Assembly (NCBI GenBank): GCA_033442325.1
Contig: JAWQFM010000001.1
Span: 2,854,420-2,918,419 of the forward strand
Length of the DNA: 64,000 nucleotides
Reading direction: 5' to 3'
Source: Salpingoeca rosetta
Lineage: Eukaryota > Protista > Choanoflagellata
The notes beneath the pieces were generated by a model that was not told where the DNA came from, did no database searches, and saw only the letters and a program-made list of their open reading frames with translations. Position 1 is the stretch's first letter. Each line of letters opens with the position of its first letter. The translations under genes and the position numbers were made by a program. Below, in pieces: positions 53,340-61,183 of the stretch.

Positions 53340-56300
53340 ATGGCGCCCCGAGCTTCTTGGGCTGCCATCCTGTTCTCCTTGATGGTCGTAGTGGCCTGCT
53401 TCGGCGGTCACGTGGCTGCTGAGATCACGAGAACAATCCGGCTCGATGACAACACAACAGCGACGCACTCCACCTATCGCATTGCTGCTCTCAGCGATCG
53501 CGGTGAGTTGTTTTGCATGTGGGCGTGAAACTTGCGCGATGTGTGTGTGTGTGCGTGTGTGTTGAGAATACATGCGATCCCACCCTCAGGTGATGTGTTG
53601 TGACGCGTGCCACTTGTGATGGCGCGAAATTGCCAACGCTGTTGCGAACACAGCTCATCACACACACATACATACTTACGCACATACACATTCACTCACT
53701 CACTCACTCGCTCACACACTGCCCTTAGGCTTTGACTACTTCAACCGCACGATGGCGCCAACCTTTGACGAATATCTCAACAACGTTGTGTCAAAGAAGT
53801 TTGATGGCCTGGTTGAGTTTGTAACATACCCAGCGCGATTCCGCGATCTCCTGGATGAGGGTAAGGAAGACAAGTTTGACTTCGCCTTCACCAACCCGGC
53901 CATCTTCACGTGCGCCGAGGCCGAGCTGGCCATGTCGTCCCTCGTCACCCTTCGTCGCAACGAGCTGGGTCAGTGGGGCAGCGAAGCGCTGGAAGTACAC
54001 ACAACAACAGATGAGACTGTACATGTGCACACTGCCAGTCGGCGTGCAACTAGCCAGAAGTGGCCCTTGTCTGCCTTTCCAATCACTGCTATGGATAGCA
54101 AACACCTCACGACCACATGTTTCACGCTTCATCATTTTGAATCCGCCTCCCCACCTTGACTCACCGTCATTCATGTGCGATCGACAGGCGAGCAGCTGAG
54201 CCAGTTTGGTGCGGTCATCTTCACACGGGCCGATCGCGATGATATCAACGGCCCAATCGACATTGCTGGCAAGACTGTCGCCGCCGTATCCTTCATTACC
54301 TTTGGTGGCTTCCAAGCACAGTGGGGTCTCTTGCGTGATGAAGGCTTGGATTTTCTCGTTGATACGAAGCAGGTGCGGGCGGGCTTGTGTGTGTATGTGT
54401 GTGTGCGTGTGGTATTGGGAGCTGGAAGAAGGGGAGGCCTGTGATGCGGTGCTGTAGTGTCGCGTCACGCGTGCGAGTGGCTGAGACAATCGTGCTCACC
54501 CTGGTGTTTTCTCGTTGCATCTCCACCTGGCCAACCCAACACAGATCAAGTTCACGGACGATGAAAACTCGGTGGTCAATGAAGTGATGGAAGGCAAGAG
54601 TGATGTTGGGTTTGTCACCAGCGGCGTCCTCGAAAGTAGGTTCTGGTTTTATGGCTGTGCGACTCTGTGTGTGTTGCTGTGGTGCTCAGCGAGGAGCATG
54701 ACTTCGGTACACAGGCACACACATTCGGGCTTGACTCCTTGTTCAATGTAAACACCCTCCCCATCTCACACACAAACACACACACACACAACCATCACCG
54801 GTGTGTACTGCAGTGCAAGTGTTCAACGGCACCCTGGATTTGAAGCAGGTGAAGATTATCCACGCACAGAGCGTCATTACGACGGATGGAGACGTCTTTC
54901 CATTCATCACTTCGACCGAAGTGCTGTCTCCGGAGTGGGCCTTGGCGGCCATGCCACGCGTCAACTGGCAGGTACAGCACGAGCTTGATCCGCAGAAGCA
55001 CCATACGCACACACACACACACACACACGCACACACGTTCTCTCTCTCTCTCTCTTTTATGCGTGTGCATACAACCAGCATGTAATTTAGTCAGTGACCA
55101 CACCCCCAGGTGACATGACATGACATTGCTGTGTGGGGTGGCTGCATTGTTGAATATCCTGACGCCACCACCTGCATCACGTCCACCACCATGACCACAA
55201 CTATCACCACCTCCACCACTACAACGCAGGTGCAAGCAGCTGTTGTCGATGCCCTCATCGCCATCCAGCCCGACTCAAAGTACGCACTGCTTGGAAACTA
55301 CGTTGGTTGGCAACCGCCTCTCTCTTACACCGTCACGCGCGCCCTTCAGGTACGCCATCACCTGCAGCACAACAGGCAACTGCCTGCGTCTTTGCTTCGC
55401 TGCTTCTCTTCTCCTCCTGGGCAATGCATCCCAACTGCTTCGTCGCACTCGTGCACACACTGTGGTTGTTGTTGCATTCTCACTCCATCGGGTGCACCAC
55501 CATTATTGTCCAATCTGCCTGCTGACACGCACACACTGTGGTGGTTGCATTCTGGCACCATCCATTGTCTCATGCGCTCACACACATGCAAACAAACTCA
55601 CACGCAAACAACCGCACATATGCAACAGGTGTCGCTTGGCGTGTTGTTTGATGACGGTCTCGGCTCCTTCTCGTGTGTGCGCACCAAGTCCATCATCGAT
55701 GCTGTGGTGTGCCCGTTTGGATTTGTCAAGAAGTCTGTAGAAGAGGTCGCCAATGGCTGCGAGATGGCTGGCATCATTTGTGAGGACGGCTACGACTGCC
55801 TGTGCCAGCCATGCGAGCCCGCGTGCCCCTCCAACGCCCGCCTCCTGAGCACTGGCAGCTGTCAGTGCGAGTCTGGCTACATTGACTTTGGCGGCGCGTG
55901 CGCGCCCATCATCGCCCTCGTCATTACCATCCTCATCCCGCTGGCGGCGTTCATTGTCATCATCGTCGTCGTCGCCATGCGCTACCAGCAGAACAAGGTG
56001 GATCTGTTGTGGCACATTGCGCCCCACGAGCTCAAGTTTGAGGACCCCGTGGAGGTGCTTGGCATCGGCTCTTACGGTGTCGTTGTCAAGGCAGAGTACC
56101 GCGGCACTGCCGTCGCTGTGAAGCGCGTCGGACCACCGGAGAAGCACAAGGGTGGGCGCCACGCGTCCCGTGCAACCCGCGACAAGCAAGGCGTGCTCAG
56201 CCCAGCTGTGCTTGCCGGTGTTCGCAGCATGGCCGGGTCCACTGGCTCCACCAAGCACTCTGGGACCGGCAGCAAGCGTGGACGCTCGAAGCGATCTGCG

Positions 56301-59182: not shown

Positions 59183-61183
59183 GTGTGTGTGCTTGTGTGT
59201 GCATGTGCCTGTGTGCTCATGTGTGTGCATGTGTGTGCATGTGCTGAATCTCGTCGTCATGACATGCAATTCCTTTCTCTTCCTCACCATCATCACACGT
59301 CCCCCCCCCCCTTGTCACCCTCCCCCATCCCATTCACACCATCAGTGACCAACCTGTTGAAGGAACAGAAGGACCACGCTGCGCGCATCGGCCGCTTTGC
59401 CGTCGCCGCCATCAAGGCCGCCAACACCACGCTCATCAACGAGGATGAGCCAGACCTTGGCTGCGTCAACATCCGCGTTGGCTTCCACGCCGGCCCTGTC
59501 GTCGCAAACGTCGTTGGCACGAAGAACCCACGATACTGCCTCTTCGGCGACACGGTGAGCATTGGGTGCTGATTTGCTTGTGTGTGTATGTGTGTGTGTG
59601 GGAGTGTGTGTGCGTGTGCGTGTGCGTGTGTGTGTCTGTGTGTCTGTGTGTGCTTGTCTGTGTGTGTGTGTGTGTCTGCCACTGTTGTATCACGCCTTCT
59701 TTGCCTGTTCTCTCCCCATCCCTTCTCCCCACCCTCTCATCACGCATCCTCACGCCAACCCTCGTCAACCAACACATCCTCCACTCCCGTACCACCACTA
59801 CCCCAGGTCAACACGGCATCGCGGATGGAGAGCAACAGCGAGAAGAACCGCATCCACATGTCTGAGGCCGCGGCGGAGCTGGTGTCGCAGCAGGCGCCAG
59901 ATATGCTGCTGGAGCCGCGCAAGGCCATGCACATCAAGGGCAAGGGCAAGATGCAGACGTACTTCTTGATCGCAGACGACATTGACCACGCCAGCAGCAG
60001 CGACACGGCAGGTCTGATGGAGGCCAAGCGTAAGAAGGATCGAAAGGCCAACGCTGAGGACGATACGGAGACGGACAGCAACGACGACGAAGATGACGAC
60101 GACGACAAAGCCGCCAATGATGACAACAGCACCGACACGAAGGCCACCACCAACCCGCCTGCAGAGGAGGCGGACAAGCGCGCCGCGGACGGTCGTGAAC
60201 AGGACGTGCAGTCACAGCGCACACAGCAGGTGCGGGAGGTGATGCGTAACGGCAACATCCACCGCACCATCACGGAGACGATGCTCATGCCGGAGCCGTC
60301 TCCGGAGGACGCACCGTCACGCCGGCGGTCATTGACGGGCAGCAACGGCAGCGCCATGGGGGATCGCCACGTCTCCATCAACAACGTGCTTGAGGTGATG
60401 TACGCCGAGAGTGTGCAGTCTGACGACGTCGACTTTGGGGCTGACCGCATCAAGGAGGTGGGGGACGCCGTTCGCGCTGCTGATGCTGCCACCTCCGCCG
60501 CTAACAACAGCAAGCAGGAAGCCACCGGCTCTCCAAGTGCAGCCGTGTCCACGCTGGTTGATGCGCTTGCACAAGGCAACGTCAGCCCATACGAGAGCGA
60601 CGAGGATGACGAGGACGACTATGACGGCGAGGACAGCTCTGACATTGCAGAGGAGCTGCCGGGCGCAATGCCGCGCATGCTGCGCCAAGACTCGCTGTCT
60701 CGACGCATCGCCAGCAACATGGAAAGCCCCATCTTCAACGACGGCAGTAACAGCAACAGCAACAGCGGCAGTGGCAGTGGCAGTGGTAGCGGTAATGATG
60801 AGCTTGACGGGTTCACACACACGCCAGACATTGCCCACTCGCCAAGCGAGGAAGGCGATACGATTTCCTCGAAGCGCGTGCTTACCGACGCTCACGAGCT
60901 CCGTCGCCGCGTTTCCGACGGCAGCGGCAGGAAGAACACGCACCAGCAGGTCAGCGTGCAGCCCGCCACACCGCCCAAGCACAAGAAGGCGCTGAAGAGC
61001 ACACGTCGCAAGTCCACACCCCGGTCATCTGCTCCCTCGTCCCCAACGCGTTCTGCCACAAAGGCAAGTGGTACGCGTCGTTCGCGCAGCGCTGGTGCAC
61101 GCAAGCAGCCGCAGGTACCACCTGTCCGCGAGATGGAGCTGATCACGGATGCCGATGACAAGCAGAACGAGGTGCTCATTTGA
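53340..61183 (+). CDS. Single-pass receptor kinase-guanylyl cyclase with TtrS/PhnD-type solute-binding ectodomain
   Basis: Signal peptide. Ectodomain ~53475-55650 ([34 protein letters not shown]...[27 protein letters not shown]). Cys-rich stalk and TM helix ~55908-55978. Kinase motifs [30 protein letters not shown]. Cyclase motifs [39 protein letters not shown]. Disordered tail. Confidence 0.95.
56444..56498. repeat. ~28-bp tandem duplication in a receptor-cyclase intron
   Basis: gtgtggtcaacccgtgcatgtgatggg x2. Confidence 0.9.

What the first reader, a model, noticed from the sequence alone, without database searches (positions are those of the whole stretch)
53340..61183. Chimeric receptor: bacterial TtrS/PhnD-type oxyanion-binding sensor wired to a eukaryotic kinase plus guanylyl cyclase
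Seen: one spliced frame encoding signal peptide, ~280-aa ectodomain, Cys-rich stalk, TM helix, kinase and class III cyclase. The cyclase has the GTP-specifying Glu (KVETIGD) and Cys (RYCLFG). Knowledge: the ectodomain motifs follow the type II periplasmic-binding (Phosphonate-bd) sensor of bacterial histidine kinases such as the tetrathionate sensor TtrS. Animal receptor GCs instead use a type I ANF/Venus-flytrap ectodomain. Inference: a cGMP-coupled receptor for an environmental or bacterial small anion (phosphonate, phosphate or sulfur oxyanion), built from a horizontally acquired sensor. I recall similar architectures in algal proteomes, so it may not be unique, but I know of no characterised ligand.
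Basis: partly seen in the sequence, partly recalled or inferred. Interest (0 to 1): 0.9.

Follow-up and report, generated by a model that had tools for sequence, protein, structure and literature searches.

The report
Choanoflagellate binding-protein kinase–guanylyl cyclase receptor
This is a real, already-annotated gene of the choanoflagellate Salpingoeca rosetta for a membrane receptor that joins a bacterial-type (tetrathionate-sensor-like) binding domain to a protein kinase and a cGMP-making enzyme; it belongs to a large protist receptor family for which I found no study, and its ligand is unknown.

Summary
Window 53340-61183 (+) is a 15-exon, all GT-AG gene. Its translation is identical to the annotated S. 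rosetta protein "TKL/DICTY4 protein kinase" (1452 aa, scaffold GL832955.1).

Domain order:
- signal peptide
- PF12974 (Phosphonate-bd) class II binding domain
- Cys-rich stalk
- one TM helix
- kinase with all catalytic residues
- class III cyclase with the GTP-type Glu/Cys

The ectodomain folds like PtxB/HtxB/PhnD (AF2 pLDDT 93.5; Foldseek E 2e-17). By profile it is much nearer the TtrS sensor domain (57 bits) than transporter PhnD (17 bits).

The interpretation needs three corrections.
- **Not unique.** S. rosetta has at least 6 genes with this architecture, plus a seventh lacking a listed cyclase. There is a 66%-identical ortholog in Microstomoeca roanoka. Relatives occur in five other choanoflagellates, diatoms, cryptophytes and a green alga. 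Some relatives carry a histidine-kinase output instead.
- **Any bacterial origin is old.** Five introns interrupt the domain, and all 40 eukaryotic copies form one clade (100/99).
- **A phosph(on)ate-type ligand is not supported.** The STS-His oxyanion motif is absent (T-F-G and Glu instead).

The ligand stays unknown. This is a new, uncharacterised variant of receptor guanylyl cyclase, of moderate interest.

The parts
53340..61183 (+). Whole gene: 15 exons, 14 GT-AG introns of 172-417 nt, CDS 4359 nt, product 1452 aa (P0368, S. rosetta 'TKL/DICTY4 protein kinase'). Exons: 53340-53502, 53729-53968, 54188-54372, 54545-54635, 54814-54971, 55230-55349, 55629-56351, 56651-56802, 57079-57268, 57492-57602, 57804-57935, 58192-58500, 58918-59116, 59346-59554, 59807-61183.
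   Evidence: translation identical to P0368; annotated span 7,844 nt on GL832955.1.
53340..53417 (+). Signal peptide, aa 1-26: one Arg, a hydrophobic core, then small residues before Glu27.
   Evidence: Read from the translation. No predictor was run. AF2 pLDDT is low for the first residues after it.
53469..55349 (+). Class II periplasmic-binding-protein ectodomain (PF12974 Phosphonate-bd, TtrS-like sensor branch), aa ~44-319. It is spread over exons 1-6 and interrupted by 5 introns.
   Evidence: Pfam 76.1 bits. Family HMM 264 bits over positions 3-313 of 317. AF2 pLDDT 93.5 with Foldseek PtxB 5o37 E 2.2e-17, TM 0.79. NCBIfam TtrS 56.9 bits.
55629..55901 (+). Cys-rich stalk (11 Cys, EGF-like spacing), aa 320-410. 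The Cys pattern is conserved across the family.
   Evidence: Weak hEGF hit of 20 bits, below the cut-off. AF2 predicts it confidently, pLDDT about 85-96.
55902..55979 (+). Single transmembrane helix, aa 411-436, followed by a basic juxtamembrane stretch (RYQQNK).
   Evidence: Read from the translation.
56010..58386 (+). Protein kinase domain, aa ~447-820, exons 7-12. Catalytic residues are all present: Gly loop GIGSYG; beta3 Lys484 (56121-56123); alphaC Glu; HGD catalytic loop with Asp at 57555-57557; DFG Asp at 57810-57812; APE.
   Evidence: PF07714 167 bits and PF00069 132 bits. Motifs read.
56127..56794 (+). Ser/Lys/Arg-rich, low-complexity insert of about 120 aa between kinase strand beta3 and helix alphaC. 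Paralog P0100 also has a long insert here.
   Evidence: The Pfam kinase match starts only at profile position 34.
58930..59971 (+). Class III nucleotidyl cyclase catalytic domain, aa 863-1049, exons 13-15. Metal Asp residues lie in FFSDIVGFT and ETIGD. The GTP-type Glu is at 59089-59091 and Cys at 59537-59539. The Asn and Arg lie in [10 protein letters not shown].
   Evidence: PF00211 189.7 bits. It is 43-46% identical to an animal receptor GC cyclase and 29-30% to an animal membrane adenylyl cyclase.
59972..61183 (+). C-terminal acidic/Ser-rich tail of about 400 aa, probably disordered, plus the stop codon. Its sequence is not conserved in the M. roanoka ortholog.
   Evidence: No significant Pfam family. 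The ortholog alignment ends at about aa 1070.

Best explanation
The gene encodes a type I single-pass plasma-membrane receptor of Salpingoeca rosetta.

**Shown**
- The extracellular part is a two-lobed, class II binding domain of the TtrS-like sensor branch of the Phosphonate-bd family. It sits on a Cys-rich stalk.
- The cytoplasmic part is a protein kinase that keeps every catalytic residue, followed by a class III cyclase with guanylyl-cyclase-type substrate residues.

**Inferred**
- A small extracellular molecule binds in the cleft between the two lobes, and lobe closure is passed through the stalk and TM helix to the cytoplasmic side.
- The cyclase works as a homodimer, as single-domain class III cyclases do, and makes cGMP.
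- The kinase binds ATP and probably phosphorylates the receptor or a partner. It would then act as gate or second output, as the kinase-homology domain does in animal receptor guanylyl cyclases.
- cGMP would then act on the cGMP machinery known in this species, such as its CNGK channel.

**Ligand**
The ligand is unknown and is unlikely to be bound in the phosphonate/phosphite manner. Pocket residues differ between paralogs, as expected of a diversified chemoreceptor family.
For: - **Gene model and identity with the annotated protein:**
- **Domains:**
- **Fold of the window's own ectodomain:** AF2 pLDDT 93.5, pTM 0.89. Foldseek's top 35 PDB hits are all PF12974 binding proteins. A homolog gave the same result. 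The family profile hits PtxB in the PDB at E 9e-12.
- **Sensor rather than transporter branch:** TtrS model 56.9 bits against PhnD model 17.3 bits. Identity to ectodomains of bacterial hybrid histidine kinases is 30-34% over the full length.
- **Kinase and cyclase residues:**
- **Conservation:** ortholog 66% identical over 1064 aa in M. roanoka. Same architecture in at least 6 S. rosetta genes, plus a seventh with no cyclase listed, and in M. brevicollis, Choanoeca, diatoms, cryptophytes and a pedinophyte.
- **Pocket positions vary among paralogs:**
- **cGMP targets exist in S. rosetta:** CNGK channel (PMC4749565); guanylate cyclase GO term enriched in thecate cells (PMC11934334).
- **Diatom parallel:** receptor-type GCs in diatoms change expression on bacterial exudates and acyl-homoserine lactones (PMC6688387, PMC7296067).
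Against: - No biochemical or genetic data exist for any member, as far as ten full-text searches show.
- No ligand is known.
- No coiled-coil/HNOBA dimerisation domain (PF07701) is detected between kinase and cyclase, so coupling may differ from animal receptors.
- HGD replaces the usual HRD in the catalytic loop.
- The kinase carries a ~120-aa insert whose effect is unknown.
- Activity of kinase and cyclase is inferred from residues only.
- The tool returns no coordinates, so the pocket was judged from alignments, not from the model.
Confidence: 0.7

Rival explanations
1. One reading: the receptor senses phosphonate, phosphite or phosphate, bound as in PhnD/PtxB.
For: The ectodomain belongs to PF12974, and its best structural matches are PtxB, HtxB and PhnD.
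Against: - The residues that hydrogen-bond the oxyanion in PtxB/PhnD are not kept. These are the STS-His motif S124/T125/S126/H155 plus two Tyr (PMC5700983).
- The window has T-F-G, Glu and two Phe at those positions.
- The E. coli PhnD control aligns its S-T-S correctly in the same columns.
- The PhnD transporter model scores only 17.3 bits.
- PF12974 members also bind arsenite, arsenate, glycerol-1-phosphate and sterols, so family membership does not fix the ligand.
Confidence: 0.07
2. The receptor senses a sulfur oxyanion (tetrathionate, thiosulfate or similar), as do the only characterised sensors of this branch, TtrS and ThsS.
For: - The best NCBIfam match is the TtrS model.
- TtrS and ThsS use a PF12974 sensor domain (PMC5408782, PMC11293645).
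- The genome scan for relatives of the bacterial sensor P0166, itself 34% identical to the window's ectodomain, found Thioalkalivibrio and Chromatiales among other phyla. That these are sulfur-oxidising bacteria is from my own knowledge.
Against: - The score is far below the TtrS equivalog cut-off (57 against 750 bits).
- The His/Gln conserved in the bacterial sensors is Glu here, inside an acidic D-E-N cluster that would disfavour an anion.
- The bacterial G-G-W is G-G-F here.
- No structure of a TtrS sensor domain with ligand appeared among the PDB matches to define its binding residues.
Confidence: 0.12
3. The binding-protein domain no longer binds a small molecule. It serves as a dimerisation or adhesion module, and the protein is regulated from inside the cell (phosphorylation, ATP, Ca2+).
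For: The canonical ligand-contact residues are lost. The kinase looks active and carries a long Ser-rich insert that could be a regulatory phospho-site region.
Against: - The two-lobe fold and hinge are predicted with very high confidence.
- The domain is 61% identical to the M. roanoka ortholog.
- Family-wide motifs around the cleft are nearly invariant: FGG, the x-F/L-G-G loop, FPF, STx-PEW.
- Pocket positions nonetheless vary between paralogs, the pattern of ligand-binding receptors.
Confidence: 0.1
4. The ectodomain is a recent bacterial insertion, assembly contamination or a mis-joined gene model.
For: The nearest non-eukaryotic relatives are bacterial sensor kinases.
Against: - Five spliceosomal introns lie inside the domain, and its GC3 of 0.68 is high like the other exons (0.73-0.87).
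- The gene lies on a 2.68-Mb S. rosetta scaffold between eukaryotic genes.
- The same architecture is read from independent transcriptomes.
- All 40 eukaryotic domains form one clade, 100/99.
Confidence: 0.01

Closest known systems
Animal receptor (particulate) guanylyl cyclases (GC-A/NPR-A, GC-C, sea-urchin sperm GC; the 'RGC' kinase group)
   Same: Single-pass receptor with an extracellular binding-protein-type domain, an intracellular kinase-like domain, then a C-terminal class III cyclase with Glu/Cys GTP specificity. The cyclase is 43-46% identical to a mollusc receptor GC. The segment before the cyclase ([15 protein letters not shown]...) is, from my own knowledge, the same signature as in animal GCs.
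   Different: The ectodomain is class II PF12974, not class I ANF_receptor. The kinase keeps the catalytic Asp, Lys, DFG and Gly loop, whereas animal kinase-homology domains are, by established knowledge, pseudokinases. No HNOBA/coiled-coil domain is detected. There is an extra Cys-rich stalk, a ~120-aa kinase insert and a ~400-aa tail.
Bacterial TtrS / ThsS sensor histidine kinases (tetrathionate and thiosulfate sensors)
   Same: N-terminal extracytoplasmic PF12974 sensor domain followed by a membrane span. The TtrS model is the best NCBIfam hit for the ectodomain. Shared branch motifs are the x-F/L-G-G loop in place of S-T-S, PEW, and GW..P..Y.
   Different: The output here is a eukaryotic Ser/Thr/Tyr-type kinase plus guanylyl cyclase, not HisKA+HATPase_c. 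The score is far below the equivalog cut-off. The conserved His/Gln is Glu. The ligand is unknown. Diatom relatives do carry HisKA+HATPase_c+receiver after the eukaryotic kinase.
PhnD / PtxB / HtxB / AioX / ArrX periplasmic binding proteins (PF12974)
   Same: Same fold: Foldseek E about 1e-17 to 1e-11, TM up to 0.79. Same Pfam family.
   Different: Those are free binding proteins serving ABC transporters or partner sensors, and they use the STS-His motif. Here the domain is fused to a receptor and the motif is lost.
Other protist kinase-guanylyl cyclase receptors (diatom 'receptor-type guanylate cyclases')
   Same: The kinase-cyclase module is 40-48% identical. 7,412 of the 8,000 scored candidates matched that module at E<=1e-30.
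   Different: Many carry other ectodomains, such as ANF_receptor (with or without 7tm_3), SBP_bac_1/8, PBP_like_2, Peripla_BP_6 or PAN, or an added phosphodiesterase. The papers I could read do not describe their ectodomains (PMC6688387, PMC7296067).
Venus kinase receptors and ionotropic glutamate receptors
   Same: Eukaryotic receptors built on bacterial-type binding-protein folds. By established knowledge the iGluR ligand-binding core is also class II.
   Different: Different binding-protein families and different outputs (tyrosine kinase; ion channel). No sequence relationship was tested here beyond weak GlnH hits.

Membership tests
Receptor guanylyl cyclase (animal RGC type) | Single-pass membrane topology with an extracellular ligand-binding domain | tested here: met
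   Signal peptide, 385-aa ectodomain and one hydrophobic helix followed by basic residues. Read by eye, with no topology predictor.
Receptor guanylyl cyclase (animal RGC type) | Ectodomain of the ANF_receptor (PF01094, class I) type | tested here: not met
   No PF01094 hit; PF12974 instead. Foldseek's top hits are class II PF12974 proteins.
Receptor guanylyl cyclase (animal RGC type) | Intracellular kinase-homology domain between the membrane and the cyclase | tested here: met
   PF07714 167 bits, residues 600-819. Here it has a full catalytic residue set.
Receptor guanylyl cyclase (animal RGC type) | Coiled-coil / HNOBA (PF07701) dimerisation segment before the cyclase | tested here: not met
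   No Pfam hit for residues 810-875 even at E<=10. The mollusc receptor GC P0406 does list PF07701.
Receptor guanylyl cyclase (animal RGC type) | Class III cyclase domain with GTP-specifying Glu and Cys plus metal Asp, Asn and Arg | tested here: met
   PF00211 189.7 bits. Motifs [33 protein letters not shown]. Enzyme activity was not tested.
Phosphonate-bd / PhnD family (PF12974) | Profile match above the Pfam gathering score | tested here: met
   76.1 bits against a cut-off of 27. Exons 2, 3 and 4 hit colinearly.
Phosphonate-bd / PhnD family (PF12974) | Two-lobe class II periplasmic-binding fold | tested here: met
   AF2 pLDDT 93.5. Foldseek PtxB/HtxB/PhnD/ArrX/AioX E 2e-17 to 3e-11.
Phosphonate-bd / PhnD family (PF12974) | STS-His oxyanion-binding motif with flanking Tyr residues (PMC5700983) | tested here: not met
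   The window has T-F-G, Glu, Phe and Phe at those positions. The E. coli PhnD control aligns S-T-S correctly.
TtrS/ThsS-type sensor kinase | PF12974 sensor domain nearer to TtrS than to transporter binding proteins | tested here: met
   NF040750 TtrS 56.9 bits, E 1.3e-15, against TIGR01098 17.3 bits.
TtrS/ThsS-type sensor kinase | Reaches the TtrS equivalog score, and has HisKA + HATPase_c output | tested here: not met
   56.9 bits against a cut-off of 750. No HisKA or HATPase_c in P0368.
TtrS/ThsS-type sensor kinase | Responds to tetrathionate or thiosulfate | not testable with these tools
   Needs binding or reporter assays.
Active eukaryotic protein kinase (annotated TKL/DICTY4) | Gly loop, beta3 Lys, alphaC Glu, catalytic Asp and Asn, DFG, APE | tested here: met
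   All present: GIGSYG, VAVK, E in [22 protein letters not shown]. Subfamily placement (TKL against RGC) is inconclusive: 32% to a mollusc GC kinase-homology domain, 30-35% to the other animal kinases compared.

The most novel reading that the evidence does not exclude
[quoted passage not shown] It comprises six such genes in S. rosetta plus a seventh without a listed cyclase, some in tandem, with differing pocket residues. On this reading, the window's receptor and its M. roanoka ortholog use a conserved acidic, aromatic-lined pocket to recognise a cationic or zwitterionic bacterial metabolite rather than an oxyanion. A member of the family could be the still-unknown receptor for one of the bacterial cues that control S. 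rosetta development.
Probability: 0.15. Interest if true: 0.85.

Novelty: new variant of a known kind. Interest (0 to 1): 0.55.

Why it matters
Receptor guanylyl cyclases are a classic animal signalling family, but their pre-animal history is poorly described. This gene shows that the sister group of animals has many kinase-cyclase receptors that differ from the animal ones in two ways:
- The sensor is a bacterial tetrathionate-sensor-like binding domain, not the ANF type.
- The kinase appears catalytically competent, not a pseudokinase.

That offers a view of what the module may have looked like before the animal kinase-homology domain lost its catalytic residues.

S. rosetta changes its life history in response to bacterial molecules (my own knowledge). 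I know of no identified receptor for them, and the searches here found none. Diatom receptor-type GCs respond transcriptionally to bacterial exudates (PMC6688387, PMC7296067). A defined, genetically tractable family of candidate small-molecule receptors is therefore useful.

The modularity is also of interest for sensor engineering. The same sensor, stalk and kinase are wired to a cyclase, to a histidine kinase plus receiver, or to a cyclase plus phosphodiesterase.

The gene itself is already in public databases with these Pfam domains attached. What is new is the reading of it, not its existence.

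Tried and rejected
- **PDB search with exon 3 alone:** only a chance-level GlnH hit, because the query was too short.
- **The search for homologous proteins with the C. flexa homolog P0011:** mostly fish ephrin receptors, owing to the word index. It was useful only for a set of bacterial PF12974 sensor kinases.
- **The exon-7 search of the representative library:** it never returned the window's own protein (best hit 61%). 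I first thought the protein was absent from the databases. It turned up later as P0368, by searching with the kinase-cyclase part of paralog P0100.
- **My first gene model:** it had two wrong junctions (exon 5 acceptor 54820, exon 7 donor 56385). These were corrected against P0368.
- **The search for related loci with alignments A2 and A3:** A single bacterial protein worked.
- **Tree with E. coli PhnD as outgroup:** the outgroup branch is very long (about 6 changes per site), so I do not use it to name a donor lineage.
- **Kinase subfamily (TKL against RGC):** could not be settled by pairwise identity.
- **Rfam and tRNA scans of the window:** nothing found.
- **Ten literature searches:** no paper describes a PF12974-kinase-cyclase receptor. 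The library lacks most subscription journals, so this is not proof of absence.
- **Contamination, recent transfer and a separate-genes model:** considered and rejected (see the rival explanations).
- **Human origin:** the contig is not human. It is S. rosetta.

Full report
**What is there.** The window is eukaryotic. It has short introns full of (CA)n/(GT)n repeats, N gaps, and GC near 55%. A long ORF at 627-3011 is 100% identical to the NCBI protein "riboflavin biosynthesis protein RibA [Salpingoeca rosetta]" on a 2,682,829-bp contig. The source is therefore the choanoflagellate S. rosetta, not human and not bacterial.

Between 53340 and 61183 on the + strand, fifteen stop-free segments can be joined through GT...AG junctions in consistent phase. 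My first model (1461 aa) differed from database protein P0368 at two junctions. With the exon 5 acceptor at 54814 and the exon 7 donor at 56352, the translation equals P0368 exactly, at 1452 aa. P0368 is NCBI "TKL/DICTY4 protein kinase [Salpingoeca rosetta]" and UniRef "guanylate cyclase". It lies on scaffold GL832955.1 of GCA_000188695.1, and its 7,844-nt span matches the finding's coordinates. There is no second copy in the window.

**Domains.** Pfam on P0368 gives four families:
- PF12974 Phosphonate-bd, 76.1 bits, E 3.7e-21, residues 83-296
- PF07714, 167 bits, residues 600-819
- PF00069, 132 bits
- PF00211, 189.7 bits, residues 863-1049

There is no ANF_receptor. Even single exons 2, 3 and 4 hit PF12974 in colinear order, and the kinase and cyclase exons hit their families.

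From the translation I read the following:
- a signal peptide (aa 1-26)
- three N-x-S/T sites in the ectodomain
- an 11-Cys stalk (aa 320-410; only a weak EGF-like hit)
- a TM helix (aa 411-436) followed by basic residues
- a ~120-aa Ser/Lys/Arg-rich insert between kinase strand beta3 and helix alphaC
- a ~400-aa acidic/Ser-rich tail with no family

The kinase has GIGSYG, VAVK, the alphaC Glu, [11 protein letters not shown] and APE. Every catalytic residue is present, with Gly in place of the Arg of HRD. The cyclase has both metal Asp residues, the Glu of KVETIGD, the Cys of RYCLFG, and the Asn and Arg of [10 protein letters not shown]. It is 43-46% identical to the cyclase of a mollusc receptor GC, but only 29-30% to an animal membrane adenylyl cyclase.

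**The ectodomain fold.** An alignment of 48 ectodomains headed by P0368:27-412 gave an AlphaFold2 model with mean pLDDT 93.5 and pTM 0.89. Foldseek against the PDB returned PF12974 binding proteins as its first 35 hits: PtxB, HtxB, PhnD, ArrX, XAC2383, GpxB and AioX. The best was PtxB 5o37 at E 2.2e-17, with TM 0.79 on the target. Transferrin lobes followed. A model of the nearest homolog, from Pedinophyceae sp., gave the same picture (pLDDT 96.3). A profile of the family also finds PtxB by sequence, at E 9e-12.

**Sensor branch, not transporter branch.** Against NCBIfam, the ectodomain's best model is NF040750 "tetrathionate respiration histidine kinase TtrS" (56.9 bits, E 1.3e-15, profile positions 39-243). 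The transporter model TIGR01098 reaches 17.3 bits.

The window's ectodomain aligns over its whole length at 30-34% identity with the N-terminal domains of bacterial hybrid histidine kinases and PAS-GGDEF proteins. It also matches Azospirillum "sensor histidine kinase" genes on plasmids. That is about as close as it is to most eukaryotic relatives (30-37%).

TtrS and ThsS are the characterised sensors with this domain (PMC5408782, PMC11293645). The 57 bits are far below the 750-bit equivalog cut-off. I therefore call it TtrS-like, not TtrS.

**Ligand.** In PtxB and PhnD, the oxyanion is held by the STS-His motif (Ps_PtxB S124, T125, S126, H155) and by Tyr residues (PMC5700983). I mapped these through the profile alignment to PtxB and through an hmmalign table. 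In that table E. coli PhnD, fetched as a control, correctly shows N-S-T-S-G in the motif columns.

| Position (Ps_PtxB) | This protein | Other sequences |
|---|---|---|
| S-T-S (S124-S126) | T-F-G | M. roanoka ortholog T-Y-G |
| His155 | Glu, within D-E-N | His or Gln in the bacterial sensors; Gln in most diatom-type proteins |
| The two ligand-contacting Tyr | Phe, Phe | - |
| Capping Tyr | Phe | - |

All sensor-type domains, bacterial and eukaryotic, have x-(F/L)-G-(G/S) in place of S-T-S. The S. rosetta paralogs all differ at these positions.

PF12974 proteins are also known to bind arsenite, arsenate, glycerol-1-phosphate and sterols. A phosph(on)ate-type ligand is therefore not supported. 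A sulfur oxyanion is possible only by analogy, and the acidic cluster argues mildly against any anion. I could not inspect the pocket in three dimensions, because the tools return no coordinates.

**A family, not a singleton.** A search of 1.84 billion representatives with the stalk-TM-kinase N-lobe piece gave 656 hits at E<=1e-3 and 201 at E<=1e-10.

Full-length hits show two architectures:
- PF12974 - TM - kinase - cyclase
- PF12974 - TM - kinase - HisKA - HATPase_c - receiver

Named members:
- Seven S. rosetta proteins: P0100, P0338, P0339, P0340, P0342, P0368, P0421. P0342 has no cyclase listed. Two of them are tandem neighbours on GL832973.1.
- Microstomoeca roanoka P0386, the ortholog: 66% identity over 1064 aa, and a complete ORF from a transcriptome.
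- Salpingoeca infusionum, Choanoeca perplexa and C. flexa.
- Monosiga brevicollis MONBRDRAFT_34366, with three tandem PF12974 domains.
- The diatoms Seminavis, Stauroneis, Nitzschia and Rhizosolenia; the cryptophytes Rhodomonas and Hanusia; and Pedinophyceae sp. YPF-701.

The kinase-cyclase module is far more widespread. 7,412 of the 8,000 scored candidates matched it at E<=1e-30. It is combined with other ectodomains, including ANF_receptor with or without 7tm_3, SBP_bac_1/8, PBP_like_2, Peripla_BP_6 and PAN, and once with a phosphodiesterase. The claim of a striking one-off chimera is not.

**Origin of the sensor.** Five introns lie inside the domain, and its GC3 (0.68) is high like the other exons (0.73-0.87). 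The domain has therefore been in a eukaryotic genome for a long time.

I built an IQ-TREE tree (LG+C20+F+G4 PMSF, 63 rows, 291 columns). It held 40 eukaryotic domains, 22 bacterial or archaeal TtrS-like sensor domains and E. coli PhnD as outgroup. It shows:
- All eukaryotic domains fall on one side of a branch with 100/99 support, nested among the prokaryotic sensors.
- The window's protein is sister to the M. roanoka ortholog (100/99).
- Choanoflagellate sequences are not one clade.
- Proteins with histidine-kinase output sit inside the diatom-type cyclase group.

This fits one old acquisition of a bacterial sensor domain, followed by duplication, output swapping and perhaps eukaryote-to-eukaryote spread.

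Three limits apply. The prokaryotic sample is small and was chosen by similarity. The outgroup branch is very long. No donor can be named.

**How it probably works.** By analogy with animal receptor guanylyl cyclases and with bacterial sensor kinases that carry binding-protein domains, I infer the following. Ligand-induced closure of the two lobes is passed through the stalk and TM helix to a dimeric cytoplasmic part. The cyclase domains there form the active site and make cGMP. The kinase acts as an ATP-dependent gate and possibly a second output.

Only the parts list is shown. Coupling, dimerisation, and kinase and cyclase activity are inferred. No HNOBA/coiled-coil domain is found in the linker, so the coupling may differ.

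S. rosetta has cGMP targets such as a CNGK channel (PMC4749565). The guanylate cyclase GO term is enriched among genes upregulated in thecate cells (PMC11934334). In C. flexa, cGMP controls colony inversion, and its source was left open between particulate and soluble cyclases (bioRxiv 10.1101/2022.02.14.480389). In the diatom Seminavis, many receptor-type GCs change expression on bacterial exudates and acyl-homoserine lactones (PMC6688387, PMC7296067). That fits a role in sensing bacteria but does not prove one.

**Verdict.** The protein is a member of a large, uncharacterised protist family that I regard as a new variant of receptor guanylyl cyclase. Its sensor is TtrS-like, its kinase looks active, and its ligand is unknown.

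It is already present in public databases with the right Pfam domains attached. I found no paper that describes the architecture, within a library that lacks most subscription journals. Interest is moderate (0.55). It would be high only if a ligand or a role in bacterial sensing were shown.

No step had to be referred.

Noticed in passing
window 627-3011 (+): A long exon of the S. rosetta riboflavin gene. It is 100% identical to the 1091-aa 'RibA' protein, which fuses GTP cyclohydrolase II, DHBP synthase, pyrimidine deaminase and reductase domains. This identified the organism.
   Followed up: partly
window 54813/54819 and 56352/56385: Two places have alternative in-phase splice sites. Tandem acceptors 6 nt apart before exon 5 add or drop Gln-Val. 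Two donors 33 nt apart end exon 7, differing by 11 aa in the kinase insert. The annotation uses 54814 and 56352. Alternative splicing is possible but untested.
   Followed up: partly
window 22259-22358, 28219-28318, 36301-36400, 48318-48870, 51380-51479: Assembly gaps (runs of N; four are exactly 100 nt). The last lies about 1.9 kb upstream of the receptor's start codon.
   Followed up: no
window 50800-53330 and nearly every intron of the gene: Dense (CA)n/(GT)n and (ACA)n/(CAG)n microsatellites produce long spurious ORFs of the THTHTH, CVCVCV and poly-Thr/Gln kind on both strands.
   Followed up: no
window ~45666-52548 (+); L025 2327-9209: The upstream neighbour is an ankyrin-repeat DHHC palmitoyltransferase gene. 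The downstream neighbour (window ~61777-63834, - strand) is a 183-aa protein without Pfam hits.
   Followed up: no
window 22721-23827 (-): An ORF with a sub-threshold TACC_C match (27.7 bits, cut-off 29.9).
   Followed up: no
P0027, P0051, P0053, P0065 (diatoms; e.g. Nitzschia inconspicua KAG7340885.1): A sister architecture has the same PF12974 sensor, stalk, TM and eukaryotic kinase, followed by HisKA, HATPase_c and receiver instead of a cyclase. That is a Ser/Thr-type kinase placed between a bacterial-type sensor and a bacterial-type histidine-kinase output. Their sensors nest within the cyclase-type clade.
   Followed up: partly
P0347 (Monosiga brevicollis MONBRDRAFT_34366, 2261 aa): Three tandem PF12974 domains (about 80-338, 521-843 and 1052-1332) precede one kinase-cyclase module.
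   Followed up: partly
L024 2580-9136 and 10001-17043 (S. rosetta GL832973.1): Two paralogs (1350 and 1391 aa) lie head-to-tail, indicating tandem duplication of the receptor family. A third paralog, P0338, is on a contig of the same length.
   Followed up: partly
P0450 (1676 aa, ENA metagenome): A relative combines PF12974, kinase, cyclase and a PF00233 cyclic-nucleotide phosphodiesterase in one protein.
   Followed up: no
L023 5938-7704 (Salmonella enterica plasmid pCFSAN057241): A TtrS-like histidine kinase (320 bits to the TtrS model, below its cut-off) with a response regulator. It lies next to flavocytochrome c / NapC-NirT genes rather than ttrBCA, so it is probably a sensor for another respiratory substrate.
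   Followed up: no
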